Positions 31,918 through 63,390 of a stretch of DNA of 64,000 nucleotides are shown piece by piece. The stretch's first letter is position 1. Each line of letters starts with the position of its first letter. Where the stretch lies: sequence record NC_031043.1; one strand, given 5' to 3'. Below the pieces are notes generated by a model. The model had not been told where the DNA came from, made no database searches, and was given only the letters and a program-made list of their open reading frames with translations. The position numbers were made by a program, and so were the translations under genes.

Positions 31918-32565
31918 ATGAAAAAACCTTTTGTAATTGCTGTGGGTGGGCCGGACTACGGTGGCAAGTCGACGTTCTGTGCGGCTGTCACTAATTTACT
32001 GGCGGCTGCTGGGTATACCGCGGAGACCATTGGTTTCCCAAGTGCTGCGCCCACAGGTTTGGCTGCACGTGAGTCAATTCGAGCATTTGAACCTCCGGCA
32101 GTCCAAGCTCAGAAACTGGTGAAAGATTTCAAAACTCACCTCAATGAGTTTGGACGCAAGACGGCTGATGTTATTCTCCTCGACCACTTTGTCGTTTCGA
32201 CGATTATGCACCAGGGTGACGAGGGGAAAGAAGCGGTCTTCTCAAGTGGTATCCTACGCCACAACTTTAGTCCTGAAGTCTACGTAGAGATTACGTGTGA
32301 CTACGATACCATGCAGACGCGTGCTATAGAGCGACTCAGGGAGAAGGGTGAAGTCTGGGATGACGTGCTGACTGCGAAATACATGGCAACGCCTGAAGCT
32401 TGGCAGAAGCTGGTAGAACGTAGTGAGTTTGGCCACCGCATCGTAACAGACTCCGGTGAACGCCGTGAATGGATTAGACTCAATGCTCGCTGGAATAGCA
32501 GCCATGCATTGGATCTTGTTCTGAAGCTGGTACGGACGTTTGAGAGCGAACGCGAACCTGCCTAA
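31918..32565 (+). CDS. Thymidylate (dNMP) kinase-like protein
   Basis: P-loop GPDYGGKST, FPS motif, LLDHFVVST (DR-motif variant), P...V...C...T...R lid region. Confidence 0.75.
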   Translation: MKKPFVIAVGGPDYGGKSTFCAAVTNLLAAAGYTAETIGFPSAAPTGLAARESIRAFEPPAVQAQKLVKDFKTHLNEFGRKTADVILLDHFVVSTIMHQGDEGKEAVFSSGILRHNFSPEVYVEITCDYDTMQTRAIERLREKGEVWDDVLTAKYMATPEAWQKLVERSEFGHRIVTDSGERREWIRLNARWNSSHALDLVLKLVRTFESEREPA

Positions 32566-37467: not shown

Positions 37468-38487
37468 ATGAAACAATATTTGGAATTAATGAGTAAGGTT
37501 TTAAATGAAGGCGTTGTTAAAGGCGACCGTACTGGCACTGGTACGTTGTCTCTGTTTGGGCATCAAATGCGTTTTAATTTGGCTGAAGGTTTTCCTCTGG
37601 TCACTACTAAGCGCTGTCACCTCCGTTCTATTATTCATGAACTCCTTTGGTTCCTGAAAGGGGATACCAATACCCAGTACCTGAAAGATAACGGCGTCAC
37701 TATCTGGAATGAGTGGGAAAACGAGAACGGTGACTTAGGACCGGTATACGGAAAGCAGTGGCGGTCTTGGCCCGAAACCCGTGCTGTGCCTTACGAGCAG
37801 TTCAACGAATTAACCGCTGCAGGCTATGAAGACCTCGATGCCGCGACGTGGAGTATGGATGAAAATTGCACACTTTACTTTGTTCAGAAAACCATTGACC
37901 AAATCTCCAAGGTCATTGACCAGTTGAAAAACGACCCAGATAACCGACGCATTATTGTCAGTGCATGGAACGTTGCCGACCTCGACGATATGGCCTTAGC
38001 GCCATGCCATGCGTTCTTCCAGTTCTACACCCGTGAACTGTCGCTTATCGAACGCTCTCGATTAAACGGAGGGGGTGACGATGGGGATTACTACCGCTTC
38101 CTCAACGCTAAGCATCAGGAGCAAGAGCATGATGAGTTTGACGATTTAGGCGTCCCACGCCGTATCCTGTCCTGTCAACTCTACCAACGTAGCGCGGACG
38201 TGTTCTTAGGTGTGCCGTTCAATATCGCGTCGTACGCTCTGCTGGTTCACATGTTTGCACAACAAGCCAACATGGCCGTGGGCGACTTCGTCTGGACGGG
38301 TGGTGACGTACATCTGTATTCCAACCATCTGGAACAGACACGTACTCAGCTAGGACGCACTCCGCGCACATTACCTAAATTGGTTATCAACCGTAAGCCT
38401 GACTCTATCTTCGACTATAAGTTTGAAGACTTCGAGATTGAGGACTACGAGCCTTACCCCGCCATTAAAGCGCCGGTGGCGATATGA
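37468..38487 (+). CDS. thyA: Thymidylate synthase
   Basis: DRTGTG, ELLWFL, LAPCH (catalytic Cys), [18 protein letters not shown] (Asn indicates dUMP specificity), and C-terminal IKAPVAI as in E. coli; two insertions. Confidence 0.97.
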
Positions 38488-38761: not shown

Positions 38762-38953
38762 ATGTCTAGTGATAGACCACCGCAGGAGCTCTTAGATGAG
38801 ATTCTTGCTGACTTTAAAGAGCGTGGGCTTGAAGAAGTTACTATCCACCACATGGGTTCGCATATCCACGTCTCTGCGATTAACGTGAAACGTAAACGTG
38901 TGGTCAATGCCTTCGCCAGAACGGAGTATAAAAAGCGATGGGGAATGAATTAA
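38762..38953 (+). CDS. Small hypothetical protein
   Basis: SD ggag; coupled to neighbours. Confidence 0.65.
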   Translation: MSSDRPPQELLDEILADFKERGLEEVTIHHMGSHIHVSAINVKRKRVVNAFARTEYKKRWGMN

Positions 38954-39669
38954 AGAATGTTGCGAAACGAGATGCGGGCGGTAAGCTGTATTATCCTGTT
39001 ACGTTGATTGACAGTGATGGCTACTTTGCTATTAACCGTATTAATTACCGTTTGGATGCTACCAGACTAAAAGATTTCACTGCCTTCACTCGCAAGCAAC
39101 TGTATGTTGAGTTAGAACATCCAGTGAACGAGCCGCTGGAGCTTAACGACAGACATAAATGTATTGCGATTGAAAATGTGATTGGTAGCCTTGAGCATAT
39201 CGACATTGATATCCGTGGATTCCGTGACTTCTCAGTTAAAGCGCGGTTCTATCCGAACCCTAAGCTGCCGGAAAGTATTCATCAGTGCTTCCGAGATGGA
39301 AAAGCTGGACTGGGGATACGCGCTACCCTCGACCTTAAAAATAATATTGAAGATATTATTACGTGGGACTTAATCGTTTCCCCTGAACCGATATTCCCAC
39401 CATTAGTGGGCGAACGTCCTCCGGTTAATGAAACTGTCTTCGTCAGTTCGAACCGCGGCTTTACGTGGTTCCCAGCCCAGTTCCTTTGGATTGGTGAGAA
39501 GTCTTTCGTCTGGCGGAACATGGTGCCGGGCGCTCGTGCTGATGGGGAAATAACCCACAACGGACATTACACGTACTTCTTGTGGGCTTCTGCACCTGAC
39601 TGGTTAGAGCTGGCCAAGTATCAGGGGGACGAGCGTCCAGATTATCTTCGCAGTAGGAGCGATAAATAA
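38938..39669 (+). CDS. Prohead-protease-like protein (phiKZ gp175/T4 gp21 fold), probably inactive
   Basis: YVELEHP, ENV...LEHI, GLGIRA (Ser absent) and ITWDLIVSP. Confidence 0.55.
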   Translation: MGNELKNVAKRDAGGKLYYPVTLIDSDGYFAINRINYRLDATRLKDFTAFTRKQLYVELEHPVNEPLELNDRHKCIAIENVIGSLEHIDIDIRGFRDFSVKARFYPNPKLPESIHQCFRDGKAGLGIRATLDLKNNIEDIITWDLIVSPEPIFPPLVGERPPVNETVFVSSNRGFTWFPAQFLWIGEKSFVWRNMVPGARADGEITHNGHYTYFLWASAPDWLELAKYQGDERPDYLRSRSDK

Positions 39670-40196
39670 TGGCTGAAAATAATATCGTGGGGTTTAAACC
39701 ACGACCTGCAACCGAATCCAAAAGTGAGCCTGTGGAACCAAGTGAAGTTGCTGAGTTCTCCCGTCACGATACTGGGCGCCTTGAATTCCCACAACCGGAC
39801 GGTGGGGTCATGAACCTTATCTTCTCGATGGACGAGGCGGATTGGTGGGCATCTCTCGCAGCACGTATGCATGTTACCATGCCGCAGGGGCCATACGGCC
39901 GTGTATTCGTATCGTTGAACGCTATCGACCATTTTACAACTAAGCTCTATCCTTTGCGTAAGCGGGTGTTGGAATTAACTCTCACCCGTCCGCAGTTTGA
40001 GCAGTTTGTTGAAGGCGTTCCTTTCTTCGTACTGGAAACCTCCGCACGAACGTGTCAACTGAGTGTCGCCGAGGATTTACTCAAACGCGCAGAAGACACT
40101 ATCGCTGCAACCCAGATTGACTCTGAGTTATCGTCGGCTATTTTCTTACAGCAGCTGAACGAAAACGATTTCCGTTTAACGTATATTGAGCAGTAA
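39669..40196 (+). CDS. Hypothetical protein
   Basis: TAATG coupling. Confidence 0.75.
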   Translation: MAENNIVGFKPRPATESKSEPVEPSEVAEFSRHDTGRLEFPQPDGGVMNLIFSMDEADWWASLAARMHVTMPQGPYGRVFVSLNAIDHFTTKLYPLRKRVLELTLTRPQFEQFVEGVPFFVLETSARTCQLSVAEDLLKRAEDTIAATQIDSELSSAIFLQQLNENDFRLTYIEQ

Positions 40197-40205
40197 GGAC
40201 AGATA

Positions 40206-40499
40206 ATGAAAGAACGTAATGGCGTAGTAGATAACTCGCACCTCTCAGCCCGCGCCTCCGGTGTGTCTCTGACCGGTGACCCGATTGAACCTGCATGGAG
40301 AACTATTAAAGGTGAAGAACGGGAAGCCCTACAGAAAGCTGACCCTAAACTTCAGGGTCGTGGTGAAATGGGTTGTCTGACTACGCTCGATGAACCGGCG
40401 TTTGCTATCCCGGGTCTCGACCCTGACGCAGTTGCACCAGAAGGTGTGGATGCTGGTCTCGACGAAGGTGGTTGTGAGAGTGGCGCATGCAAACTTTAG
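40206..40499 (+). CDS. 97-aa protein ending in an NrdA-like redox tail (CESGACKL)
   Basis: SD taagga; C-terminus DAGLDEGGCESGACKL versus E. coli NrdA ...SIQDDGCESGACKI. Confidence 0.75.
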   Translation: MKERNGVVDNSHLSARASGVSLTGDPIEPAWRTIKGEEREALQKADPKLQGRGEMGCLTTLDEPAFAIPGLDPDAVAPEGVDAGLDEGGCESGACKL

Positions 40500-40933
40500 C
40501 ATTTACTGATTACTCTCGAAAGGTAGCCCCCGACCCAAAGCAGTGCACGTTCTACGGGACTAAGCGTGAGGTTCTCACAGAAGAGCAGCACATCGATATC
40601 CCGTGGTTCTGCTTTAAGTACGTAGGCGGAAAAACCTTTACGCAGCGTATTATCGTATCCGCAGCGATGCGCTATAAAGAGCTGGGCTTAGTTCTGCCCT
40701 GTGCCCGTCATTATAGTGCTGACTTATCACGCACCTTAGACCGCCTTATTGAGCTGGGGGTGATGAAGGATAAGAAAACCCAAGTGGTCGGCGAAGACCA
40801 AGGTTTCATTGATAACTTTGGTGATTACTGGAACCGCGCACAGGCCCTGCATATCGCAAAGTGTGCTGGGCAGTTGGAAGGCCGGGATAAAACCGGCGGT
40901 GAAGACGAATTGTATTCCGAAGACCTTTACTAA
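40487..40933 (+). CDS. Conserved phage hypothetical protein (QGFID...A...AGQ...LYSEDLY family)
   Basis: Motif pattern recalled from many phage hypothetical proteins; function unknown. Confidence 0.7.
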   Translation: MQTLAFTDYSRKVAPDPKQCTFYGTKREVLTEEQHIDIPWFCFKYVGGKTFTQRIIVSAAMRYKELGLVLPCARHYSADLSRTLDRLIELGVMKDKKTQVVGEDQGFIDNFGDYWNRAQALHIAKCAGQLEGRDKTGGEDELYSEDLY

Positions 40934-40952
40934 CTTTAAAATGGAAAAGACC

Positions 40953-41822
40953 ATGACCGTAGAAGCAATCAAAGTTTTTCAAGTACCTGTAAAACACAAA
41001 GTCATCAAATTCGCTACCACGGATGACAAACTTGTCCATGTTGTTAATAAGTGGTCGCAGAGAATGTTTGAGGGTCTGTCGGGCCCTGGCGTTCAGTTAG
41101 AGTCGATTCAAGAAATCTCCCTTACTGGCAAAACTCTGCGCGTGGTCGGTACTGAACGTATTAACGGGGAAGTCTGGTTCTGGATGCCTGCGAGTGCAAT
41201 CGACTGCGGCTATGAAGTGATTGGGGAAAAGGAATACCCTCGCGATGTTCCACTGTTCTCTATTCGTGAGTGTGTAGAGAACGTACTGGCGTGGTCTTCG
41301 GCTCGTGGTATTCTCGATAACGGCGTCTGGTACACACAAGGTACTAAGTTGTACGAAGAAGATGGCGAAGCTGCTACCGGGGTCGGCAAGAACAAACATC
41401 CGCTTATCATGGATGGTATCGGCGATGCAATCGTTGTGCTGGTGAACCTGATGGAACTGACTGGCTACGAAGCCATGGAAATCGCTTGTCATGTCCACGC
41501 GGCTCAGAACGAAGAAGCGCCTGCAGGTAACAGCCATTACCTGTTCCACAAAATGCGTTTCCACATCACTAACGCGATTGATTACCTCTGGGATGAAGCG
41601 GGTATCGATTCGCCGAAAAAGCTGGACTTCAAATCGATTGAGAACAGCGTATGTACCTGCATTGAATATCATTACGAACAGATGCTGTCATACGCTAACG
41701 CTCTGGCGAATGCGTATGACATGACACTGGAGCAATGCTTCTCTCTGGCGTGGGATGAAATCAAAGACCGTAAAGGCTACTTAAACGCAGACGGTATTTT
41801 CATCAAAGAATCTGACGCGTAA
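40953..41822 (+). CDS. MazG-like NTP pyrophosphohydrolase with N-terminal extra domain and internal insertion
   Basis: W...RG, KLYEEDGE, DGIGDAIVVL and LEQC...AWDEIKDRKG...GIFIKE. Confidence 0.8.
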   Translation: MTVEAIKVFQVPVKHKVIKFATTDDKLVHVVNKWSQRMFEGLSGPGVQLESIQEISLTGKTLRVVGTERINGEVWFWMPASAIDCGYEVIGEKEYPRDVPLFSIRECVENVLAWSSARGILDNGVWYTQGTKLYEEDGEAATGVGKNKHPLIMDGIGDAIVVLVNLMELTGYEAMEIACHVHAAQNEEAPAGNSHYLFHKMRFHITNAIDYLWDEAGIDSPKKLDFKSIENSVCTCIEYHYEQMLSYANALANAYDMTLEQCFSLAWDEIKDRKGYLNADGIFIKESDA

Positions 41823-44548: not shown

Positions 44549-45052
44549 ATGACAACCGTGTTTGTTTGTAAGGACTTCATAGTCGCTGACCGTGTGTTAA
44601 CCCGGGGCGATGAAACCATCCATGCTGACTTTAAGAAACTGCACGTCAACAGTGAGAAGACCATTGCGATTGCGGTGGTGGGTAATGTGAACTTTCGCGA
44701 CCACCACAAAATGGTGGCTAAGCATTTCTTCGGTGTTATCAAGAAACGTTATACCAGCATACCGGCACCTGTCCTGACAAAGTCGGAGGCTGCGTTAATT
44801 GGGGATTTGCAATTATACGTGTTGACCGCAAAAGACGTGTTCGTGATTACCAAAGCAGAGAACGTCCAGTGGGTAGCGGACGGATTAACCGAAGGGGCAG
44901 GGACAGGCTACGCATTAGCGTGTGCGGCTTTCTCGCTGGGTGCTAAACCAGAACACATTGTTCCTCTTGTTTCCAAGATAGACCCGATGTCCTCGACTGC
45001 GTTTAACATCGCATATCGCGTCGACCTCAAACCGATCACCTTAAAGGCGTAA
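44549..45052 (+). CDS. HslV/proteasome-beta-like Ntn-hydrolase peptidase
   Basis: SD ggag; starts MTT (catalytic Thr after Met removal), then IVADR, KKL, GAGTGYAL and VSKIDPMSS. Confidence 0.7.
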   Translation: MTTVFVCKDFIVADRVLTRGDETIHADFKKLHVNSEKTIAIAVVGNVNFRDHHKMVAKHFFGVIKKRYTSIPAPVLTKSEAALIGDLQLYVLTAKDVFVITKAENVQWVADGLTEGAGTGYALACAAFSLGAKPEHIVPLVSKIDPMSSTAFNIAYRVDLKPITLKA

Positions 45053-45054
45053 TC

Positions 45055-45603
45055 ATGGATATTGCTGCGATTATTACCCAGAAAGAGTTGTTCATCCGTA
45101 ACGTTGCGTGGGCTGCAGGATTACCGCAACCCATTAACTTGGACATTTGCTATACACCATTCGGGTTTGTTTTTCCGACGAACAATTACCAGCCTGTACT
45201 TGACGCAATAAATACAAAACAGGCCGATGCTATGCCGACGGGAGCTATACGTTGGGCAGTCTTAGGACATGACAACGTACTACGTTATGGCCGTATAAAT
45301 AATGAGTGGTGGACACTTAACATCGTGCCTGACACCCAACGCTTCTATTGCTTAGCAGATGAGGCGGAGACACATTACCTGACGTCTATGATTCATTTGA
45401 TGTCCAGTGGGTTAATCGAACCTGAAATGGCTTTAACCGATACTGCCCCGCAGCTGATACGTAGACTGAAGAAACATTGGCCGATGGTTGGTGACTTCCT
45501 GAAATTTAAACGGTCAGATGTTCTGGCCGAGTTACACAAACGATTCCCTAACCCTGAAGAAATTTATTTCCATTCCCAATTTACGAGTGTATTAAAAGAT
45601 TAA
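45055..45603 (+). CDS. Hypothetical protein
   Basis: Operon coupling. Confidence 0.75.
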   Translation: MDIAAIITQKELFIRNVAWAAGLPQPINLDICYTPFGFVFPTNNYQPVLDAINTKQADAMPTGAIRWAVLGHDNVLRYGRINNEWWTLNIVPDTQRFYCLADEAETHYLTSMIHLMSSGLIEPEMALTDTAPQLIRRLKKHWPMVGDFLKFKRSDVLAELHKRFPNPEEIYFHSQFTSVLKD

Positions 45604-45604
45604 C

Positions 45605-46342
45605 ATGGCTAAATCTAAATCCCCCCGCAAAAAGAAACCTGCTAAACCTAACCATGGCGCGCGTCACATTGTACTGGCAATTAAAGCAGCGTATAACAAG
45701 CTGTTCTTCTTAGGCTCCTCGAACCTGCCTATTACCGCTATGCGCACTAACACGCTGCGCGCTCATTTAAAACCTGCTGATGTGGAGATAGCCATCCCGA
45801 CGTTACTGGACGAGCTGCGTTTCTTCCCGCGCGACTGGCATATCTGGGTTGGCGCCTTCTGTGAAAATGGTGAAGAGCGTTGGGTGGAAACTTCCATCAG
45901 TAAGATGCCTCAGTTCGTGGTCAGTGACTTCTCTGATAACGCGGAGTCTATCGTTCGTGGGGTAATGGAAACAGAGAACCTCGAACACATGGTCGGGTAT
46001 GCGTACATGGTCGCCCCTAACGACTATTACAACATGGAAGTCATGAATGATGAGCTGTGCGACAAGTGGGTTGATGCGAATATCTACGATAAGTCCACAC
46101 ATCTCTCAGCAGACCTCCTCAAACTGCGTGAGAACGACTTAGCAGCCGCGTTCATGGGTTTGCCGGGTTATGTCGCGCAATCGCGTGAGAAGATTGTACA
46201 GAAGACTATTGAGAACCTCGAAAAGAAAGGTATCAAAGTTGATAAAGCGTATGTCGACTCCAAGTTCAATCAACAAGATATCGTGGACGCCCTCGTATCG
46301 GCAGGACGTCAATTCAATCCGTTTGAAGGAGAAACGTTATAA
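45605..46342 (+). CDS. Hypothetical protein with basic N-terminal arm
   Basis: MAKSKSPRKKKP; coupled to neighbours. Confidence 0.8.
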   Translation: MAKSKSPRKKKPAKPNHGARHIVLAIKAAYNKLFFLGSSNLPITAMRTNTLRAHLKPADVEIAIPTLLDELRFFPRDWHIWVGAFCENGEERWVETSISKMPQFVVSDFSDNAESIVRGVMETENLEHMVGYAYMVAPNDYYNMEVMNDELCDKWVDANIYDKSTHLSADLLKLRENDLAAAFMGLPGYVAQSREKIVQKTIENLEKKGIKVDKAYVDSKFNQQDIVDALVSAGRQFNPFEGETL

Positions 46343-46590
46343 TGGAAAACGAACAGCCTGTCTTCCCGGTGTACAATGAACCCTCCAATCCAGAATTTGC
46401 TATTGCGCACCAGCGAATGTACAACCTGGCTCGTGAGAAACAAGTCAGCTATGAGTTACACTACTCGGAAGTGGAGGACTCTTGGTACGTTGTGGTCAGT
46501 AGCTGCGCCCAATCTGAAAACCTTATCACCAAGACACGTTCTTTATCCCTTGTGATGGACGTCGCCATTAAGCATCTCGAAGCACTTTAA
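46342..46590 (+). CDS. Small hypothetical protein
   Basis: SD aaggag; TAATG coupling. Confidence 0.75.
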   Translation: MENEQPVFPVYNEPSNPEFAIAHQRMYNLAREKQVSYELHYSEVEDSWYVVVSSCAQSENLITKTRSLSLVMDVAIKHLEAL

Positions 46591-46604
46591 AAAATTACAT
46601 TTAG

Positions 46605-46640
46605 ACCCCTTACTTTGTGTAAGGGGTTATTACTTTTTTT
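46605..46640 (+). terminator. Intrinsic terminator
   Basis: accccttac/gtaaggggt stem followed by a T-run. Confidence 0.7.
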
Positions 46641-46671
46641 GCACGCAAAAAACATACCTGTTGAGGATACA

Positions 46672-46989
46672 ATGAAAAGAAAAATATTGGTGCTGGCATT
46701 AGTAATGATGTCCGCCGGGTGTGACGCTTCAGAAACCAACTTGTACTACGACCAGCAGCTCCGACGGGAAATCTTCAAAGAGTGTCTGGCATCCATTCCA
46801 AAAGGGCCTGAGAAAATCGATAACTCTAACGACTGGCAGGAAGTGGTTGAAGAGTGCGGCGAACAGGCCAGGAAGATGTCGGCGTTCTATGTGAAGATTC
46901 CTTCCTCTGGTGGTGAAGGTTATTATTTCAATAACAGCATCAAAGGCGGCGAAATGAAAGAACGTACTCCTCAGAAGGTGCAGAAATGA
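46672..46989 (+). CDS. Lipoprotein 1
   Basis: SD gagga; signal peptide MKRKILVLALVMM with lipobox SAGC; Asp at +2. Confidence 0.8.
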   Translation: MKRKILVLALVMMSAGCDASETNLYYDQQLRREIFKECLASIPKGPEKIDNSNDWQEVVEECGEQARKMSAFYVKIPSSGGEGYYFNNSIKGGEMKERTPQKVQK

Positions 46990-47243
46990 AAACACTCATT
47001 TTAGCACTAACTACTACCGCACTACTGGCGGGTTGTGATACGGGACCGGCCCAGAAGGCCGTCTATCGCACAGACGAGGCCAAAGAAGAGCGGTTGTACA
47101 TGGCGTGTCTCGACGCTGTGAAGGTTAAAGTTAAAGCAGGCGAAGATAATCTCGAGGACGCGATTACCTCTTGCCGTACTAACGCGTCGGCGCTGTCATC
47201 CAAAATGGTTTATGTCAATGCGAATCCTAAAAAGCCTCAGTAA
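46986..47243 (+). CDS. Lipoprotein 2 (paralogue of lipoprotein 1)
   Basis: MKTLILALTTTAL with lipobox LAGC; Asp at +2; same two-Cys pattern. Confidence 0.85.
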   Translation: MKTLILALTTTALLAGCDTGPAQKAVYRTDEAKEERLYMACLDAVKVKVKAGEDNLEDAITSCRTNASALSSKMVYVNANPKKPQ

Positions 47244-47331
47244 TCTCGCCGGTTACGGTATTAGCACGATAGCGGCAGGGACCCTTGCATTCTTTGCCGT
47301 TTATTACTTAGCGTTCTACGTCATTATTTAA
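47218..47331 (+). CDS. 37-aa single-TM peptide (not in ORF track)
   Basis: MRILKSLSNLAGYGISTIAAGTLAFFAVYYLAFYVII; fills the gap before the HslU-like gene. Confidence 0.45.
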   Translation: MRILKSLSNLAGYGISTIAAGTLAFFAVYYLAFYVII

Positions 47332-47379
47332 CCCGTCACCCGACTACCCTTGCGTGGTTGGGTACAATGAGGAATAAGC

Positions 47380-49428
47380 ATGAAAGGTTCTAAAGGTATT
47401 CGCACTCCGGTAGAAATGGTTGAAATCTTCGATAAGTCAGTCCGTGGTCAGCATGACGCTAAGCGTATGCTTGCCGTTGCGATTGCAAACCGTCACCGTC
47501 GTACCAAACTCTCAGCAGAAGACCGCAAGTTCATCAAGAAACAAAACATCTTGATTGAAGGCCCTACCGGTTCAGGTAAGACTGCGCTGATGCGTGTACT
47601 GCGTGAAGACTTTGGCTTGCCGGTATTGGAAGTGGATATCACAGAGTACAGTGAAACCGGTTATCACGGTAAGTCCGTCGCGGATATGATTGGTCAGCTC
47701 TCGCAGCTCGACTTTACGGTGCCGAAGTGGTTTAAGGAAAAGCCCGAAGTTAAGGAAGTGAAGAAGGCCGAAGATGTTAAGCTTACTGCGAACAGCTCCT
47801 TCGATAGTGGGACTAAAGACAAAGACACCGCCCGCAAGCATCTCATCGTCTCCCGTATCCTACTGATTGGGTTAATCGCCGGACGTGTATACAGTAATCA
47901 TGCGCTCTCTGATGCTGGTGTGGGCTCTATGATTCACAAGACGGTGGAAGATTACGGCTCAGAAAACCCCGCTGAACTGATTAACTTCTTCCAGCGTGGT
48001 TGTGATTTGGTAGATAACCACGAAATCCCTATTCTTGCCGACTCCACAGCGTTCATTGAAGCGGCCGCCCGGGCTATCATACCGTTTGAAGAGTCAGGCG
48101 ATAAAGACCGCGTACCGACCCCTGAGTTCTTCGCACGTTATAAACTCGAAGGGTCGACTGTTAATGGGCTGCTCGGCGGTTTGATGGCATTAGACGTAGC
48201 CGACATTAACGCCCTGTGGGATGTCAAAACGCCAGTTGAAGAAATTGAAGCTTGGCCGAAGGTAGCACTTGCCGGTGAAAAGAACGGGTTCTATCGTGAA
48301 CGCTTGAAAGCCGCCATGACAACGTACTTCTTCCGTTCGTTGATTGCAGGCATGCTTCGTAACGACGTGGCAAAAGTTACCGACCACGCTTCACGTACCA
48401 TGGCGATGCAGAAGTACAACGGCAAAGACATGACCAAAGAAGTAACGACAATTTTATCTTCCGATAATCAAGAAGAGAAAGACAAGTTACTTAAGTACGT
48501 CAAAGATGGGATGCCGGTATTGTGTGCCAGCTCAATGGTTTCCTTGAGCCGTGGATTCCGTTCGTGGACTAATGCGCTACCTAAGCTGAAACTGACTACC
48601 AAGTCAGAACTGTTATTCCCGCCTAAGGTGACAGCGGCATGGGATGAGCTAATCGACATGACCTTTGAAACGTTTTGGGACTTAACCACCAAAGATTTTC
48701 AAAGTAAGACGGTGAAACAAGTCCGTGACGATGTCAACAATGGGGGCTTGCTGTTCGCTCCGAGCGGGGATACTGGTTTGGATAACGACATGCCGTGGAA
48801 TCGTCGACCACCAATGGGTGGTATTCCGGGTCTGGGTATGATGTTCAACATGGGCGGCGGCGCTAACGTTACTGGAGATTCCAAAGAGTTCCTCGAGAAC
48901 TTTGCGGTCGTCTTCATTGATGAAATCGATAAACTGATTCAGGCATCTGACCGTTCTGATGACGTTTCACGTATTGGCGTACAACGCGGTCTACTGAAGC
49001 TGGTAGAGGGCGGCGTCTATAGTGGTATCGACACTAGCAACATTCTGTTCGTGGGCGCAGGAGCCTTCTCAGGCACCACACCGTCGAAGCTGTTACCTGA
49101 GCTGGTTGGCCGCTTCCCAATTCGTGCCCGTCTGAAGGCATTAACGCACGATGACTACAAAGCCATCTGTCAGTTAAGTAAATCAGCGTTCAACATGTAT
49201 CTGAAGATGCTCGAAACGGATGGCGTTAAAGTTATCCATGATGACGACACCTTTGGTTACATTGCGCAGATTACTGAACTGGAAAACCAGGAATTCAATC
49301 TGGGTGCTCGTCGCATTGAAGCGATTATCGAGCGTGTTTTTGAACCGGCCATGTTTGAGCCGGAGAAGTTCTTAGAACACGGGTTTGATATCCGTGGTGA
49401 AACACTACGTAAATCATTAAGAGGTTAA
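47380..49428 (+). CDS. hslU: HslU (ClpY)-like AAA+ unfoldase with enlarged I-domain
   Basis: GQHDAKRMLAVAIANRHRR, GPTGSGKT, GYHG, VFIDEIDK, SRIGVQRGLLKLVEG, PELVGRFPIR and LGARRI. Confidence 0.85.
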   Translation: MKGSKGIRTPVEMVEIFDKSVRGQHDAKRMLAVAIANRHRRTKLSAEDRKFIKKQNILIEGPTGSGKTALMRVLREDFGLPVLEVDITEYSETGYHGKSVADMIGQLSQLDFTVPKWFKEKPEVKEVKKAEDVKLTANSSFDSGTKDKDTARKHLIVSRILLIGLIAGRVYSNHALSDAGVGSMIHKTVEDYGSENPAELINFFQRGCDLVDNHEIPILADSTAFIEAAARAIIPFEESGDKDRVPTPEFFARYKLEGSTVNGLLGGLMALDVADINALWDVKTPVEEIEAWPKVALAGEKNGFYRERLKAAMTTYFFRSLIAGMLRNDVAKVTDHASRTMAMQKYNGKDMTKEVTTILSSDNQEEKDKLLKYVKDGMPVLCASSMVSLSRGFRSWTNALPKLKLTTKSELLFPPKVTAAWDELIDMTFETFWDLTTKDFQSKTVKQVRDDVNNGGLLFAPSGDTGLDNDMPWNRRPPMGGIPGLGMMFNMGGGANVTGDSKEFLENFAVVFIDEIDKLIQASDRSDDVSRIGVQRGLLKLVEGGVYSGIDTSNILFVGAGAFSGTTPSKLLPELVGRFPIRARLKALTHDDYKAICQLSKSAFNMYLKMLETDGVKVIHDDDTFGYIAQITELENQEFNLGARRIEAIIERVFEPAMFEPEKFLEHGFDIRGETLRKSLRG

Positions 49429-52322: not shown

Positions 52323-53123
52323 ATGAGGTCAGTCGCATTAGAGAATTTAATCTCGCTAATTAATTCCGCTAACTCAGCTGAAACCCCCATCTCGCTTGAA
52401 GATGTCGACGTTTCAGTCCCGTACGAAATCAATACTGATGGTTGCGACACTGAGGTCGTCGTCACTACCAAGCCTGATTATCTGCCATTGCGTGGTAAGC
52501 AGACCTTCCGTTATCTGCGCCGTGCTATTGGTAGCGTTGTCAAAGGGGATTTGGAACTGTATTTAGACCCGGAGATGCAAACCAGTTACGATTTGATTCC
52601 GTTCTTGAACCAAGAGCTCGGGATTCAACTCACCGAAGACGATGTGATTAACGACCCGATTGTGGACGAGATTCACCTCCTACGTGCCGCCCCCCGTTCT
52701 TACGAATGGAAAGACACGGCTATCGTGCTGATGAAGCAAGCCACGAAACTGGAAGAAGTGATTACTGAGACGGGCTTAGACGGTCTGGTGTATCCGGACT
52801 CTCAAGACCCGATAGGACAAGCCTACATCTATTCCTACGGGGTAGACTGTTCGCGGATTAAACCGTTCTTATCAGTAATGGCTCCTGGCGTGGAGTTTGA
52901 TGATACTGCTCTTGCGGTAGAATTGAACAAGGCCGTACCAGAAGTGTGGGTAGCGGTGTCAACGCAGGCCGACTGGAACCTGAAAGACGCCCAGTGCGTG
53001 TATGAAGGTCCGACTTCGGGACTGATTGGTGCAAACCCGGCCTTCGAGCGTGTGGTGTCCATCGAGCTGAGCGAGCTGTGCAGTAATTTCGCCGGTACGC
53101 TGAACCTGCATTACAATCCATGA
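52323..53123 (+). CDS. Virion tail/baseplate paralogue 1 (phiKZ gp131-like family)
   Basis: LI.LIN..N...T......G...F.YLR...LN..LG..L..DD; C-terminal G.LNLHYN. Confidence 0.75.
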   Translation: MRSVALENLISLINSANSAETPISLEDVDVSVPYEINTDGCDTEVVVTTKPDYLPLRGKQTFRYLRRAIGSVVKGDLELYLDPEMQTSYDLIPFLNQELGIQLTEDDVINDPIVDEIHLLRAAPRSYEWKDTAIVLMKQATKLEEVITETGLDGLVYPDSQDPIGQAYIYSYGVDCSRIKPFLSVMAPGVEFDDTALAVELNKAVPEVWVAVSTQADWNLKDAQCVYEGPTSGLIGANPAFERVVSIELSELCSNFAGTLNLHYNP

Positions 53124-53132
53124 GGTTAAGAC

Positions 53133-53975
53133 ATGGCCAAATACGTTAAGACCTCGAAAGAGATGTTGTTGGATACCATCAACATCGAGAACAACCTGCA
53201 AGCCACCCCATTAACGTGGGACGTGATTGCAGCCGGTTACCCTGAACTGGTGACCACCCCGGGAGCTGACCGTAATACCCGTGTGCTGTTATACGGACTG
53301 TACGGTCAAGGCTATAAAGGTAACGTGACCATCACGTACAACCGCCTTGAAATGCCAGTGATGTTCCGGAACGTCGTGCCTGTCGTGGTGACGAACCCGG
53401 TCGATAAGCTCTCTGACCTGTTGCCATTCTTAAACAAAAAGTATGGCTTGTCTTTGATTGCGGATGACATTGTCGACCAGTCAGTGAAAGACTTAGGTGA
53501 GAGCTGGATTCTGGATGTGGTGGTGAAGCCGGGTAGTCTGGCTTGGACGGGTACCTTCCGCTTACGTTATGCGAAGTTCTTCCCGAACTTAGCCGATGTG
53601 ATTACGGATGTGGACTTAAGCGCAATCATCGCGCCGTTCACCGTGGCAGATAAACCTCAAGCGGAGTACGTGTCCTACGGTTACGACTGGACAGACCTGC
53701 GGCAGCAGTTTGAAACGGATTGGGCATTCAACCGTGCCATCACTGCTGCTGATGTGGATATGCTGAACGAGATTGTCCCGTTGAAATTCACGTATGCATT
53801 ACCTGCGGATGCCAAAGAAGGGGAAATCTCTTTGCGTGGCGCTCGCTATCAAGGTACTGCGGCAGTCGCTGCTAAGAGTCAGCATAATCCTGACTACCGG
53901 CGTGTGGCTGTTATCAAACTGGCTACGACCAGTAACTACGCGGGTAACCTCTTCTTCCATTACTTACCGCTGTAA
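53133..53975 (+). CDS. Virion tail/baseplate paralogue 2
   Basis: Same domain pair; ends GNLFFHY. Confidence 0.75.
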   Translation: MAKYVKTSKEMLLDTINIENNLQATPLTWDVIAAGYPELVTTPGADRNTRVLLYGLYGQGYKGNVTITYNRLEMPVMFRNVVPVVVTNPVDKLSDLLPFLNKKYGLSLIADDIVDQSVKDLGESWILDVVVKPGSLAWTGTFRLRYAKFFPNLADVITDVDLSAIIAPFTVADKPQAEYVSYGYDWTDLRQQFETDWAFNRAITAADVDMLNEIVPLKFTYALPADAKEGEISLRGARYQGTAAVAAKSQHNPDYRRVAVIKLATTSNYAGNLFFHYLPL

Positions 53976-53983
53976 GGGATACC

Positions 53984-54829
53984 ATGCCAATTTTAGCAAC
54001 TGCTGAACAAATTCTGATTGATGAAATCAATACAGAAAACGGGCTGGACCTGAGCGTGGAAGATGTGGAATTTGCTCTCCCCCAGGTACCAACCACTCCT
54101 GAAGAACTGACCGCGGCCAATGGCCACAATGCAATGGTGCGTATTCAGGCACTGGCTACGGCTAACGCATTAGGCCACACCTCCGTCTATTACGACCGCG
54201 TGGATTTCGCAGACCTCTTTACTGACCCGGACGGAATCTCTCCGTTACGTGTACCAGCTCGACTGGACAGTGTGTTTACGTGCCACGATATTGTTAAACT
54301 GATTAACCAGTATTACGGGTTAAGTCTCCGCGTGGGCGATGTTGAGAACACCGACGTCGATCGGGTGGCATGGAAAGTCCTCTTGAAAGCGACACCAACT
54401 TCGTTGGGCTGGATTGGGGAACAAACGGTACAACTGATTCCCGGGGATGCCTTGCTGCCGTCGAACTTCGACCCGCAAAGTGTAACCGCCTACAGTTATC
54501 CGCACTTTAATACCCGTGTGGGGCAAGGGGCAATTTACTCCTACCCGTGGCGTTTTGATAACTATGCTGCCGAGCTAAAAGCTGGCGGTATGAATCTGAC
54601 CATGGCTCGCTTGGCGCAAATCCTGAAGTTGGTTACAGGGGATGCGTGGATTGTTTATCGTAACCCGATTAACTTTAACCTGCTGGAATGTGCGGTGTCG
54701 TATAACGGCCCTAACCGTGCAGACTTACCAACGAACCCATCCGTGGATAACGTGTTAGTTATCGAACTGTCGCTTTACTGTCTTAACCTTGGCGGGCGTT
54801 TGTACCTCCATTACAACGACCCCGATTAA
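53984..54829 (+). CDS. Virion tail/baseplate paralogue 3
   Basis: YYDRVDF; ends GRLYLHYN. Confidence 0.75.
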   Translation: MPILATAEQILIDEINTENGLDLSVEDVEFALPQVPTTPEELTAANGHNAMVRIQALATANALGHTSVYYDRVDFADLFTDPDGISPLRVPARLDSVFTCHDIVKLINQYYGLSLRVGDVENTDVDRVAWKVLLKATPTSLGWIGEQTVQLIPGDALLPSNFDPQSVTAYSYPHFNTRVGQGAIYSYPWRFDNYAAELKAGGMNLTMARLAQILKLVTGDAWIVYRNPINFNLLECAVSYNGPNRADLPTNPSVDNVLVIELSLYCLNLGGRLYLHYNDPD

Positions 54830-54848
54830 ACCGTGAAAGGAAGTTAGA

Positions 54849-55772
54849 ATGAAACCTTTAAACAAAACGTCCGACCTGCTGGTTCTCGATTTCATTAACG
54901 AAAAGAACCCGACCGCCGAGCTGGAGCTGTCCAAGGTCAGCTTCGATGACCCACGCGCTAAAACTCCTGAAGACGCGACAGCTGACGGTACCAATACCGA
55001 CCTGACCGTAAAAGCCCGTAAGAACTCCGGCTATATCGGCACCCAAGACGTTGACTATAACCGTCTTGATGGCGTGTCACTGTTCCGTAACGTTACTGCG
55101 TATCTGGACGTTAAACTGCCGAAGACCACTACTGACCTGCTGACCCAGCTGAACGCCCAGTATGGCCTGAAGCTGACTGCGGACGATATCGTCCCGGCTG
55201 ACATCCCTGCGGATACTAACCCGCCAGTGACCGACCCGGATGCACCAGATCCAGTTCCAGTTGACCACACCATTACCTTTGCAGAAACCTGCTTAGCGTA
55301 CATCGGTACCATCCCGGTTAAAATCGGTCCTAAGCCACAGGTGGGTGAACGTCTGAGTCTGGTTATCCCTAACACCAAACTCGATGGTCTGGTTTACCCT
55401 GACGGCGCTGACGCAGTTAAAGGTCAGGCGTACATCTACTCGTACGGCATTGACGCGACTGCAGTGGCAACCTTCCTGAAAGCACAAGCTGAAGGCGTAA
55501 TGTCCAACGATACTGCATTTGCAGTAGAGATGAACAAAATCGTCCCAGAGCTGTGGGTTGGTTCTGAAGATGCAGCTGACTACAACCTCAAAGGCGCGAA
55601 CGTTATTTATAACGGTGCCACCATTAAGCAAGTTGACGATGGTGCAGGCGGTACTAAAGACGAACCTGTCGAAGGTGCGAACACTGAGTTCAACAACGTC
55701 ATGTTGCTGGAACTGTCTGATACACTGTGCTCTAACTTCACCGGCACAATGTTCTTGCACTACAACGCCTAA
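54849..55772 (+). CDS. Virion tail/baseplate paralogue 4
   Basis: YNRLD; Pro/Asp-rich insert; second half very similar to paralogue 1; ends GTMFLHYN. Confidence 0.75.
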   Translation: MKPLNKTSDLLVLDFINEKNPTAELELSKVSFDDPRAKTPEDATADGTNTDLTVKARKNSGYIGTQDVDYNRLDGVSLFRNVTAYLDVKLPKTTTDLLTQLNAQYGLKLTADDIVPADIPADTNPPVTDPDAPDPVPVDHTITFAETCLAYIGTIPVKIGPKPQVGERLSLVIPNTKLDGLVYPDGADAVKGQAYIYSYGIDATAVATFLKAQAEGVMSNDTAFAVEMNKIVPELWVGSEDAADYNLKGANVIYNGATIKQVDDGAGGTKDEPVEGANTEFNNVMLLELSDTLCSNFTGTMFLHYNA

Positions 55773-55778
55773 GTGCTC

Positions 55779-55822
55779 GCTAGGGGGAGGGATTCCTCCC
55801 CCTAGCCTCTCTTAGTTTTTTA
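55779..55822 (+). terminator. Intrinsic terminator
   Basis: 12-bp stem gctagggggagg/cctccccctagc. Confidence 0.75.
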
Positions 55823-55842
55823 GACCTGCCGAGGAGGCTGCT

Positions 55843-56682
55843 ATGCCACTTTATAGTAAGTCTCAGCAACAGTTCCTGCTTGACGCGATTAATGCAGTGT
55901 CGCCGGGTGCGATTATGCCTGCCGACCTTGAGAATTGTACGTTTGGTGACCCCCGTGCAATTACTGCTAAGTTACCTGAAGACCCGAATACCGAGATTAC
56001 CTTACGAGGACGTCAAGGTCGTGGTTACATCGGGGTACAAACTTATCGCTATCGCCGCCTGTCGTTGAACGACTTATTCAAAAACTTTATTCCTCAGGTC
56101 ACTGCACCGACCGCATATGGCTGGCTGAATACCGTTGCAAAGAGAACTGCGTTTGCTCAGAACCTGAATGGGCGTTACGGGTTGAATCTGGTAGCGGATG
56201 ATATTCCGGAAAACTACATTTATTTGAACCTTGAGAACACACTGGCTGTTAAAGCAACGTGCGTGCAATATACAGGTTCTATTCGCTTCATGTCCATTCG
56301 TGGGAAGAACAACCTCGAAGACATGGTGCTGAACGACTTACTGCCGGTGATGAACCACCCGGTGGATGTAGCGCTGGATAAGAAAGCTATTGGGATGCTG
56401 ACGTACGGTTACGACTTCACAGAAGAACCGCAGTTAATGAAAGGGTTTGTGAATGGCAGTATGTCGGTGGGGGCTAACTTCACCAGTGGGTATTCTGCAG
56501 CCCTGATGGATTTACTGTCTGACCGTGGACTCCCGACCTTCGATTTCACGGGGGCGAAGATTACACGCAAAGCGACCACTGCGGAGCCTCGCTCTAACTC
56601 ACGCTTTGACTGGGTATTGGTGATTACCGATATTCAGGATGCTCAAGTTGGCGGTGACTGTTTACTGCATTACAACAATTAG
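55843..56682 (+). CDS. Virion tail/baseplate paralogue 5
   Basis: LLDAIN, YRRLSL; ends GDCLLHYN. Confidence 0.75.
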   Translation: MPLYSKSQQQFLLDAINAVSPGAIMPADLENCTFGDPRAITAKLPEDPNTEITLRGRQGRGYIGVQTYRYRRLSLNDLFKNFIPQVTAPTAYGWLNTVAKRTAFAQNLNGRYGLNLVADDIPENYIYLNLENTLAVKATCVQYTGSIRFMSIRGKNNLEDMVLNDLLPVMNHPVDVALDKKAIGMLTYGYDFTEEPQLMKGFVNGSMSVGANFTSGYSAALMDLLSDRGLPTFDFTGAKITRKATTAEPRSNSRFDWVLVITDIQDAQVGGDCLLHYNN

Positions 56683-56694
56683 GAATAGACACGA

Positions 56695-57579
56695 ATGGCT
56701 ATTTATCAACCTTCGAAAAATGTTCTTCTGGATGCGATTAATGCACAGAACTCGTTGACGATTAAGCTGACGGATATCGTGTTCAGCGCGCCAAAGGACA
56801 TTCGCGGTACTGAGAAAGGTACCACCACGGGTAAGAACACCCAAATCAAAGTCTCCGCCGCCCCTGTAGGTTCTACGTGGTCTGGCAAGAAGAACGTCTT
56901 CTATAACCGCTTGAGTCTGGCAGACCTGCCGGTACTACTCGGCACGACTATCGCTATCGGTGCCTCTATGGAGACTATCCATCCTGCGCTAACCGGTCTG
57001 AACAACCGTTATGGTTTCGTTTTCGATACCGACGATTTGGAAGACAGCGAGATTGAATGGAATCCAGATGGACTGACCGGTACGGTACTGTTGAAGGCCA
57101 AAGCCGATAGCTTGGGCTGGGTTGGGCAACAGCAATTCTCCGTAGTGAAAGGCGATGAATCACTCGAGTCGTCTGTGACCACGAATATCTTGACCGGTCT
57201 GAAATACCCGAACGGCCAGATGGGTTCTGAAACCCCAACGTCTATCATGGCACAGGTGTACTCGTATCCGTTCGACTTCACCAAGTACCAAGCTGCGCTG
57301 ATGGCGATGACTCCGCAGGTTATCTCCGGTCAAGTCCTCACCGACATGACCAACCTGTTGAAAGACATCACGGCAACCGCGTGGGTGGCAACGACTGCGA
57401 GCACGTTCGGTCTGGCCGGGGCAGAAATCCTCAGCGTGGGCCTCAACGACGCTGTCGCCATGCCAACCAACGTCAAGTACAAGTACGTGTTGGTGCTGAA
57501 ACTCCCAGCGACCACAACCAACATCACGGGCAACTTGTACCTCCAGTTCAACGATCTGGAAGATCCAAACGAGGTGTAA
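56695..57579 (+). CDS. Virion tail/baseplate paralogue 6
   Basis: LLDAIN, YNRLSL; ends GNLYLQFN. Confidence 0.75.
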   Translation: MAIYQPSKNVLLDAINAQNSLTIKLTDIVFSAPKDIRGTEKGTTTGKNTQIKVSAAPVGSTWSGKKNVFYNRLSLADLPVLLGTTIAIGASMETIHPALTGLNNRYGFVFDTDDLEDSEIEWNPDGLTGTVLLKAKADSLGWVGQQQFSVVKGDESLESSVTTNILTGLKYPNGQMGSETPTSIMAQVYSYPFDFTKYQAALMAMTPQVISGQVLTDMTNLLKDITATAWVATTASTFGLAGAEILSVGLNDAVAMPTNVKYKYVLVLKLPATTTNITGNLYLQFNDLEDPNEV

Positions 57580-57582
57580 CCA

Positions 57583-58425: not shown

Positions 58426-58428
58426 AAT

Positions 58429-58456
58429 AAGGCCCTTCGGGGCCTTTTTCTTTTTT
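58429..58456 (+). terminator. Intrinsic terminator
   Basis: aaggccc-ttcg-gggcctt followed by a T-run. Confidence 0.8.
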
Positions 58457-58468
58457 GAGGACGTTGCA

Positions 58469-59788: not shown

Positions 59789-59796
59789 GGTGAAGC

Positions 59797-61956: not shown

Positions 61957-61974
61957 TCGCAGCCGGGAACTTAT

Positions 61975-63378: not shown

Positions 63379-63390
63379 GGGGTAATCTCT

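What the first reader, a model, noticed from the sequence alone, without database searches (positions are those of the whole stretch)
40206..40499. Stand-alone mimic of the ribonucleotide reductase (NrdA) C-terminal redox tail
Seen: a separately translated 97-aa, Pro/Gly/Asp/Glu-rich and probably disordered protein ends ...DAGLDEGGCESGACKL-stop, with no RNR catalytic barrel. Known: E. coli NrdA ends ...IQDDGCESGACKI, and this C754/C759 pair ferries electrons from thioredoxin/glutaredoxin to the active site. Inference: the phage makes the tail as a free protein, either to re-reduce host NrdA in trans and boost dNTP supply, or as a decoy for Trx/Grx or for a defence system that senses NrdA. The context fits nucleotide metabolism (dTMP kinase, ThyA and MazG lie within about 10 kb). 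This is the best candidate for an undescribed system in the window.
Basis: partly seen in the sequence, partly recalled or inferred. Interest (0 to 1): 0.85.

Follow-up and report, generated by a model that had tools for sequence, protein, structure and literature searches.

The report
Free-standing copy of RNR redox tail
A jumbo phage that has no ribonucleotide reductase of its own makes a small, probably unfolded protein whose last residues copy the electron-shuttling tail of its host's reductase. The same tail ends dozens of other small phage proteins and a few bacterial ones, which points to an undescribed way of acting on DNA-precursor supply.

Summary
Window 40206-40499 (+) is gp116 of Erwinia phage vB_EamM_Phobos, a 97-aa acidic protein ending GCESGACKL. 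Class Ia NrdA of Erwinia, E. coli, Salmonella and other Enterobacterales (761 aa) ends DDGCESGACKI, so the Cys spacing and distance to the C-terminus are the same.

- **Specificity:** a DNA pattern back-translated from the phage ORF hit the 3' end of nrdA in 118 of 120 bacterial genomes.
- **Not a remnant:** gp116 has no RNR barrel and no nrdA remnants nearby. The tail is the most conserved part of the family.
- **Wider class:** an IMG/VR scan found about 59 acidic non-NrdA ORFs with the same C-x-x-G-A-C-K-I end, in several sequence families. Many lie next to thyA, dCMP deaminase, dNMP kinase or mazG.
- **Bacterial relatives:** chromosomal homologues exist in Neisseria, Eikenella and Moraxella.
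- **Carriers:** three complete carrier genomes (Phobos, SPN3US, Arno18) lack class Ia NrdA and NrdB.

Function is untested. My best reading is a trans-acting copy of the alpha redox tail that engages host NrdA and thioredoxin/glutaredoxin. Whether it boosts or brakes the enzyme is open. I found nothing like it in the literature library searched.

The parts
40206..40499 (+). gp116: 97-aa acidic, probably disordered protein (stop codon included)
   Evidence: Translation. Annotated as a hypothetical protein. PHROG 24014, E 1e-38. pLDDT 53.
40195..40199 (+). Shine-Dalgarno-like AAGGA, 6 nt before the ATG; it overlaps the stop codon of gp115
   Evidence: Read directly from the sequence.
40401..40496 (+). 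Conserved C-terminal module (residues 66-97), the only part shared by all family members
   Evidence: Alignments A1 and A2. IMG/VR and representative-library members.
40407..40424 (+). IPGLDP motif (residues 68-73). It is invariant in the near family and lies 22 residues before the first Cys (21 in one member)
40461..40496 (+). Acidic run plus redox-tail copy DEGGCESGACKL (residues 86-97). Cys90 is at 40473-40475 and Cys95 at 40488-40490
   Evidence: Matches NrdA 750-761 of Enterobacterales. Pattern specificity 118/120.
37468..38487 (+). Thymidylate synthase (gp111). It is a recurrent upstream neighbour of tail-bearing small ORFs
40899..41822 (+). MazG-like nucleotide pyrophosphohydrolase (gp118). 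It is a recurrent downstream neighbour
31918..32565 (+). Thymidylate kinase (gp101), 8 kb upstream
   Evidence: Annotation. Translation used.
40487..40933 (+). gp117, a hypothetical protein. Its ATG overlaps the Cys95 codon of gp116, so the two may be translationally coupled. It is not a conserved neighbour in other genera

Best explanation
gp116 is a free-standing, intrinsically disordered carrier of the class Ia RNR alpha-subunit redox tail (acidic run, C-x4-C, two more residues, C-terminus).

In the host enzyme this tail does two things. It is reduced by thioredoxin or glutaredoxin, and it then swings into the active site to re-reduce the catalytic Cys pair after each turnover.

I propose that the phage copy uses the same two contacts in trans. 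Host Trx/Grx keeps it reduced, and it delivers electrons to, or at least occupies, the active site of host NrdA. The invariant IPGLDP motif, 22 residues upstream, would serve as a docking anchor.

The phages that carry it lack class Ia RNR but do carry dTMP-synthesis genes next to it. My lean is therefore that it sustains or raises host RNR turnover during infection rather than blocking it.

Shown: the sequence identity of the tail, its conservation, its distribution and its gene context. Inferred: every binding and redox step, and the direction of the effect.
For: 1. The tail is identical to host NrdA over GCESGACK and anchored at the C-terminus. The back-translated pattern is almost diagnostic of nrdA in bacteria, at 118/120 hits.
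2. Both Cys, the G-A between them, the K and the aliphatic end are invariant in every family member, while the rest diverges beyond alignment. The positions that vary (+1 and +2 after the first Cys) are the ones that also vary among NrdA proteins: E/G/K and S/G, and A/E/D/G and S/G/D in phage NrdA.
3. Keeping both Cys fits a protein that cycles between dithiol and disulfide better than a one-shot trap.
4. The 25-residue NrdA tail alone is a solved ligand, 1qfn_B. From my own knowledge this entry is the glutaredoxin-1 mixed-disulfide complex.
5. Complete carrier genomes lack class Ia NrdA and NrdB: Phobos, SPN3US and Arno18. No IMG/VR contig was hit both by an nrdA-type and a small-ORF-type tail.
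6. Tail-bearing small ORFs of different families sit beside thyA, dCMP deaminase, dNMP kinase or mazG.
7. A scrambled-codon control shows the class is not chance. The real pattern gave 104 hits, 101 in open frames and 93 with an acidic run. The control gave 32, 7 and 0.
8. Host thioredoxin reductase contributes to infection by a Serratia nucleus-forming jumbo phage (PMC11797060). This is suggestive only.
Against: - No binding, redox or activity data exist.
- The native tail is tethered to NrdA at very high local concentration, so the gain from a diffusible copy is unclear.
- Known small disordered RNR regulators (yeast Sml1 and relatives) and subunit-tail peptides are inhibitors, not activators.
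- Bacterial homologues lie between iscS and iscU in Neisseria and Eikenella. That context hints at a link to Fe-S assembly or general thiol redox rather than to RNR.
- The absence of class Ia RNR was checked in only three complete genomes, two of them related.
- The tail variants of phage and host are not matched one to one.
Confidence: 0.4

Rival explanations
1. Brake on host RNR. The free tail, docked through its upstream acidic/aromatic motif, competes with the native alpha tail (and perhaps with the beta tail) for NrdA and slows re-reduction or holoenzyme assembly. This would be analogous to yeast Sml1.
For: - Sml1-type regulators interfere with the R1 C-terminal Cys pair (PMC6382339).
- Several tail-bearing families carry an upstream motif that resembles the NrdB C-terminus, which docks on alpha. 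The summed PSSM score was 97.7 against 49.1 +/- 11.6 in shuffles, reached by 0 of 2000 shuffles.
- Chromosomal homologues in bacteria would make sense as endogenous regulators.
Against: - Carriers lack class Ia RNR yet invest in thyA, DHFR, tmk and dCMP deaminase, so they need RNR output.
- The NrdB-like motif is weak in gp116 itself (2.3 bits, p 0.31), and the scored sequences are related, so the shuffle test overstates independence.
- Retention of both Cys is not needed for a steric plug.
Confidence: 0.2
2. Thioredoxin/glutaredoxin-directed decoy or recruiter. The tail is simply the best natural substrate motif for Trx1/Grx1. The phage uses it to soak up, redirect or tether these redoxins for a purpose other than RNR.
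For: - The tail peptide by itself is a redoxin ligand (1qfn_B; the identity of its partner is from my own knowledge).
- The tail is modular. It is also found on unrelated N-terminal domains: an N4 gp49 family domain (L247), a phrog_10453 protein (L145), and 263-360 aa proteins of unknown family.
- The iscS-iscU location in Neisseriaceae fits general thiol or Fe-S redox.
- trxB matters for a jumbo phage.
Against: - A turned-over substrate is a poor inhibitor.
- The repeated neighbourhood of dNTP-synthesis genes and the absence of class Ia RNR in carriers point to RNR specifically.
- The fixed-distance IPGLDP motif suggests a second contact on a rigid partner larger than a 9-12 kDa redoxin.
Confidence: 0.15
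3. A function unrelated to RNR. The two Cys (four in a dimer) bind a metal or an Fe-S cluster, or carry sulfur, and the likeness to the NrdA tail reflects shared chemistry or ancient common origin only.
For: - Position between iscS and iscU in Neisseria and Eikenella.
- The protein is acidic and small, like other Isc accessory proteins (this comparison is from my own knowledge).
Against: - The Moraxella homologue is not in an isc context.
- In phages the neighbours are nucleotide enzymes, not Fe-S genes.
- The similarity to NrdA extends to the acidic D-D-[GND] run and to the exact distance from the C-terminus.
Confidence: 0.15
4. Decayed 3' fragment of a former phage nrdA gene, or a ribosomally made peptide precursor (RiPP) for modification.
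For: - Split nrdA genes whose last piece carries the tail exist in IMG/VR (L162, L182, L205). These show a route by which tail-only ORFs could arise.
- Two radical SAM genes exist elsewhere in the genome.
Against: - There are no barrel residues in gp116 and no nrdA or nrdB similarity anywhere in Phobos.
- The ORF has its own start and RBS.
- The small ORF is conserved across at least four phage genera with the tail under constraint.
- Synonymous sites differ from host nrdA.
- The radical SAM genes are 38 kb away, and no modifying enzyme is a conserved neighbour.
Confidence: 0.04

Closest known systems
C-terminal redox tail of class Ia ribonucleotide reductase alpha (NrdA residues about 737-761; C754/C759 in E. 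coli)
   Same: - Acidic run, then C-x4-C, then two residues to the C-terminus.
- GCESGACK is identical to Erwinia and E. coli NrdA.
- Both are disordered: the last 24 residues of alpha are unseen in crystals, and gp116 has pLDDT 53.
   Different: - It is not attached to any RNR barrel.
- It is preceded by an IPGLDP motif that NrdA lacks.
- It ends in L, not I. A few NrdA also end in L (L055, L058, L087).
Yeast Sml1 (and Spd1, Hug1, Dif1): small disordered regulators of RNR
   Same: These are small, disordered, separately encoded proteins that act on the large subunit and on the step that involves its C-terminal Cys pair.
   Different: - No sequence relation was found.
- Sml1 does not copy the tail. 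It competes with it.
- These proteins are eukaryotic and are known inhibitors.
- Binding of gp116 to NrdA is not shown.
Split phage nrdA genes (last piece carries the tail)
   Same: The tail is encoded on a separate, shorter polypeptide (L162, L182, L205).
   Different: Those pieces still contain the end of the catalytic barrel and lie beside the rest of nrdA and nrdB. gp116 has neither.
Thioredoxin, glutaredoxin and NrdH redoxins encoded by phages (for example T4 NrdC)
   Same: They are phage-encoded parts of the electron supply to RNR. This is from my own knowledge.
   Different: They are folded CxxC proteins of the thioredoxin fold. gp116 has no such domain and carries the substrate-side motif, not the reductant-side one.
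PHROG families 24014, 14561 and 38753 (unknown function)
   Same: gp116 and its SPN3US and phiEaH2 counterparts belong to them.
   Different: These families carry no annotation. The link to the RNR tail is not recorded there.

Membership tests
Class Ia RNR alpha subunit (NrdA) | Catalytic ten-stranded barrel (Pfam PF02867), all-alpha domain (PF00317) and ATP-cone (PF03477) | tested here: not met
   No Pfam hit even at E <= 1. BLASTP to Erwinia NrdA aligns the last 19 residues only.
Class Ia RNR alpha subunit (NrdA) | C-terminal redox Cys pair, C-x4-C, ending two residues before the C-terminus and preceded by an acidic run | tested here: met
Stand-alone RNR-alpha-tail proteins (class proposed here) | Short or non-RNR protein ending [DE]-D-x-C-x-[SG]-G-A-C-K-[IL], with no RNR barrel | tested here: met
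   gp116. 59 acidic non-NrdA ORFs in IMG/VR. 61 cultured phage records. Bacterial members.
gp116 / SPN3US gp032 family (PHROG 24014, 38753, 14561) | IPG[LVM]D motif 21-22 residues before the first Cys, plus ...G[VA]D... and the tail | tested here: met
   PHROG E-values 1e-38, 3e-7 and 7e-6. Alignments.
Sml1-type RNR inhibitors | Binds the RNR large subunit and blocks regeneration by its C-terminal Cys pair | not testable with these tools
   No complex prediction or binding assay was available. No sequence similarity was returned by the Pfam or PDB searches.
Thioredoxin-fold redoxins (Trx, Grx, NrdH) | Thioredoxin fold with a CxxC active site | tested here: not met
   No Pfam domain. The Cys spacing is x4. 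No confident fold.
nrdA pseudogene or remnant | Other nrdA-derived sequence nearby and DNA-level similarity to a source nrdA | tested here: not met
   tblastn of NrdA and NrdB against the whole Phobos genome found nothing better than E 0.16. Nearly all synonymous sites of the tail codons differ from Erwinia nrdA.
RiPP precursor peptide | A conserved adjacent modifying enzyme | tested here: not met
   Neighbours between thyA and mazG differ among genera. The radical SAM genes are distant.

The most novel reading that the evidence does not exclude
Phages of several lineages, and some bacteria, encode the RNR alpha redox tail as a diffusible small protein. This would be a new class of trans-acting electron shuttles or regulators of class Ia RNR. 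In some families the same peptide also copies the alpha-binding C-terminus of the beta subunit, so one 40-60 residue protein would mimic both subunit tails of the enzyme.
Probability: 0.3. Interest if true: 0.9.

Novelty: new variant of a known kind. Interest (0 to 1): 0.78.

Why it matters
RNR is the bottleneck of DNA-precursor supply. It is a classic target both of phage takeover (T4 brings its own enzyme) and of drugs. Small proteins that regulate RNR through its large-subunit tail are known only in eukaryotes.

A free-standing copy of the tail would be new for bacteria and phages. It is conserved in phages that lack class Ia RNR, and it sits among dTMP-synthesis genes. It would show how RNR-less phages deal with the host enzyme.

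It would also give a natural probe for the least understood step of the class Ia cycle: tail entry and re-reduction, which no structure has captured.

The bacterial homologues, some inside the isc operon, suggest that cells may use the same device themselves.

Tried and rejected
**Searches that found nothing**
- Pfam and PDB sequence searches with gp116 or its last 25 residues found nothing. The likeness to NrdA is too short for HMMER. With the 42-aa Neisseria homologue, RNR alpha C-termini were the top two PDB hits, but only at E about 1.
- blastn of the 3' end against E. coli genomes found no match.
- An HMM of the near family against 1.84 billion representatives gave only 17 hits, so profile searches miss most of the class. 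The DNA-pattern scan found it.
- Literature searches for the motif and for phage mimics of the tail found nothing relevant.

**Ideas rejected**
- A conserved operon with gp114 and gp115 is rejected. In SPN3US the gp115 homologue is three genes away, and the genes between thyA and mazG differ among genera.
- An nrdA remnant and a RiPP precursor are rejected (see rival explanations).
- A role specific to the phage nucleus is rejected. The class also occurs in a FelixO1-like phage of 92 kb and on roughly 60-kb contigs.

**Kept only as a lead**
- The NrdB-tail likeness of the upstream motif. It is significant overall but weak in gp116 itself, and the scored sequences are related.

**Gaps**
- The third protein-database search (NrdA tail region) listed only Enterobacterales, so it did not give the wider NrdA tail diversity I wanted.
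The version that ran requires I and a TAA stop, so the census is a lower bound.

Neither was entered into a tool or used as evidence. All comparators in this report are tool-derived.

Full report
**What the window is.** Megablast places the region at 100% identity in Erwinia phage vB_EamM_Phobos (NC_031043.1, 229,501 bp, genus Derbicusvirus). The window is record positions 62001-126000. The genome has the multiple split RNA-polymerase beta genes typical of phiKZ-like jumbo phages. The finding's ORF is gp116, annotated as a hypothetical protein.

**The observation.**
- The ORF at 40206-40499 (+) encodes 97 residues ending ...DEGGCESGACKL. An AAGGA lies 6 nt before its ATG.
- The protein is acidic (pI 4.5, net charge -8) and rich in G, A, E, D and P.
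- It has no Pfam domain. AlphaFold2 gives no confident fold: mean pLDDT 53, pTM 0.16, with a shallow 6-sequence alignment.

**The NrdA comparison.** I back-translated the phage's own C-E-S-G-A-C-K-[ILMV]-stop into a DNA pattern and scanned one genome per bacterial species.
In 118 of them the match is the last 9 codons of a long ORF ending ...DD[GD]CESGACKI, mostly in Enterobacterales including Erwinia and Escherichia.
- The 761-aa ORFs are class 1a RNR alpha by NCBIfam NF006578, at 1609-1641 bits.
- Named NrdA of E. coli, Erwinia, Salmonella and Pectobacterium from the protein database end the same way. Natural variation occurs only at the two positions after the first Cys.
- BLASTP of gp116 against Erwinia NrdA aligns residues 79-97 with 743-761 and nothing else.
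- So the Cys spacing, the distance to the C-terminus, the acidic run and eight consecutive residues all coincide.
- The PDB holds the 25-residue tail as a separate chain (1qfn_B) and many full-length entries. In crystal structures the last 24 residues of alpha are disordered, and C754/C759 are described as the pair that re-reduces C225/C462 and is itself reduced by thioredoxin.

**Not a remnant.**
- Phobos has no annotated RNR, thioredoxin or glutaredoxin.
- tblastn with Erwinia NrdA and NrdB against the whole genome finds nothing.
- The tail codons differ from Erwinia nrdA at nearly every synonymous site.

**The near family.**
- Homologues of 39-120 aa exist in metagenomes and in 61 cultured phage records. 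These include Derbicus, EarlPhillipIV, CR5, SPN3US-like Salmonella, E. coli and Proteus phages, phiEaH2, Asesino, Stratton, Machina, Huxley and pEa_SNUABM_1/30.
- The N-terminal part is variable or absent.
- The last 30 or so residues are conserved: IPG[LVM]D, then a fixed 21-22 residues containing G[VA]D and an acidic run, then C-x-[SG]-G-A-C-K-[IL].
- In Derbicusvirus, Seoulvirus and Erskinevirus the gene lies between thyA and mazG. In Alexandravirus it lies after dCMP deaminase. The genes in between are not conserved, so there is no tight operon.

**A wider class.** An IMG/VR scan for C-x-x-G-A-C-K-I-TAA gave 104 loci.
- About 45 are nrdA 3' ends. 34 were recognised by the barrel-end motif, and the rest are truncated or split pieces.
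- 59 are acidic ORFs without any RNR sequence. Most are 26-130 aa, and a few are 263-360 aa. They fall into several families that share little beyond an upstream acidic/aromatic motif and the tail.
- A control pattern with the same codons permuted gave 32 hits. Only 7 were in open frames of 35 codons or more, and none had an acidic run. The real pattern gave 101 and 93 of 104.
- In both NrdA-type and stand-alone sets the three residues before the first Cys are D-D-[GNDS].
- Stand-alone ORFs of other families also lie near thyA, dCMP deaminase, a dNMP kinase or mazG.
- Cultured carriers of these other families include Klebsiella jumbo phages of about 300 kb, Erwinia phages of about 265 kb, and the FelixO1-like Pectobacterium phages Arno18 and Wc4.
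- The tail is also fused to unrelated domains: an N4 gp49 family domain in L247 and a phrog_10453 protein in L145.

**Carriers and RNR.**
- Three complete carrier genomes were checked by annotation and by local tblastn. Phobos, SPN3US and Arno18 all lack class Ia NrdA and NrdB. Arno18 has an annotated class III enzyme.
- No IMG/VR contig carried both an nrdA-type and a stand-alone hit.
- This is a small sample, and two of the three genomes are related.

**Bacterial members.**
- One 'viral' locus (L184) is bacterial. Its 42-aa ORF lies between iscS and iscU.
- The protein is widespread in Neisseria (annotated as hypothetical in N. meningitidis) and in Eikenella corrodens, at the same iscS-iscU position. 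In Moraxella pluranimalium it lies in a different housekeeping context.
- It is 55% identical to an IMG/VR small ORF (E 6e-12) and matches the gp116 family profile at 96.6% probability.
- With it as the query, the two best PDB hits are RNR alpha C-termini, but only at E about 1.
- At least five of the fourteen Neisseria-type clusters inspected have a shifted 3' reading frame that removes the Cys pair. The gene is therefore dispensable in some strains, or those records contain errors.

**A second motif (lead only).**
- NrdB C-termini taken from the same loci end ...DD[LF]x[DN]F[EQK]L.
- Several stand-alone families carry a very similar acidic-Phe motif 20-33 residues before the Cys pair.
- A PSSM built from 49 distinct NrdB ends scores the 25 representatives far above composition-preserving shuffles: 97.7 against 49.1 +/- 11.6, reached by 0 of 2000 shuffles.
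- The signal comes from about five families, is weak in gp116 itself, and the sequences are related. I treat it as a hypothesis that some members mimic both subunit tails.

**Mechanism.**
- What the sequence shows: a disordered protein presenting, at a free C-terminus, the exact motif that in NrdA contacts the enzyme's own active site and thioredoxin/glutaredoxin. Both Cys are kept, and a second invariant motif sits at a fixed distance.
- What is inferred: that it uses those same contacts in trans.
- I lean towards support of host RNR turnover, because carriers lack class Ia RNR and surround the gene with dTMP-synthesis genes.
- A brake on RNR (as with Sml1), a redoxin decoy or recruiter, and a metal or Fe-S role suggested by the isc context all remain open.
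- A report that host trxB contributes to infection by a Serratia nucleus-forming phage is compatible with this reading but not specific to it.

**Novelty.**
- Full-text searches for the motif and for phage mimics of the RNR tail returned nothing relevant.
- The PHROG families that hold these proteins have no annotated function.
- I rate it a new variant of a known kind: viral mimicry of a host short terminal motif, and small disordered regulators of RNR. If the trans-shuttle or double-tail reading is right, it would be further from anything known.

Noticed in passing
L184:3167-3292; L256-L258:6001-6147; L259-L261:6001-6144: Chromosomal homologues of the phage tail protein. A 42-48 aa ORF lies between iscS and iscU in Neisseria and Eikenella, and between aroE and an acyl-CoA dehydrogenase in Moraxella. 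Several Neisseria clusters have a shifted 3' frame that loses the Cys pair.
   Followed up: partly
L163:2193-2345, L233:1339-1473, L237:5985-6164 and others: Some stand-alone tail proteins carry an upstream acidic-Phe motif that closely resembles the C-terminus of class Ia NrdB, the part that docks on alpha.
   Followed up: partly
L247:1193-1582; L145:5071-6135; L177:1052-1840; L186:3664-4743; L198:3028-3915: The same C-terminal tail is fused to larger, unrelated proteins: an N4 gp49/Sf6 gp66 family domain, a phrog_10453 protein, and three proteins of 263-360 aa with no family.
   Followed up: partly
L162, L182, L205 (IMG/VR): Split phage nrdA genes. A short last piece still carries the end of the barrel plus the tail and lies next to nrdB.
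   Followed up: no
window 37468-38487: The phage thymidylate synthase is long (339 aa) and appears to carry extra acidic segments relative to what I expect for ThyA. SPN3US and phiEaH2 have similarly long versions.
   Followed up: no
window 38938-39669: The N-terminal half of gp114 (243 aa, hypothetical) matches a PHROG annotated as head maturation protease (E 1e-9), although it lies among nucleotide-metabolism genes.
   Followed up: no
Phobos record 139056-141303 (outside the window); SPN3US record 140024-142139: Two adjacent radical SAM domain genes are conserved between Phobos and SPN3US. Their function is unknown.
   Followed up: no
window about 44549-49428: An HslV-family peptidase (gp123) and an HslU-like ATPase (gp130) are annotated in the phage, a few genes apart.
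   Followed up: no
window about 52323-64000: A long run of similar-sized genes all annotated as virion structural protein (gp137-gp147 and beyond). They look like a paralogous array.
   Followed up: no
PDB 9i5r_B: The acidic Leu/Asp-rich N-terminal motif of the Neisseria homologue resembles a 23-residue Pex19 peptide. It is probably only a shared acidic amphipathic-helix composition.
   Followed up: no
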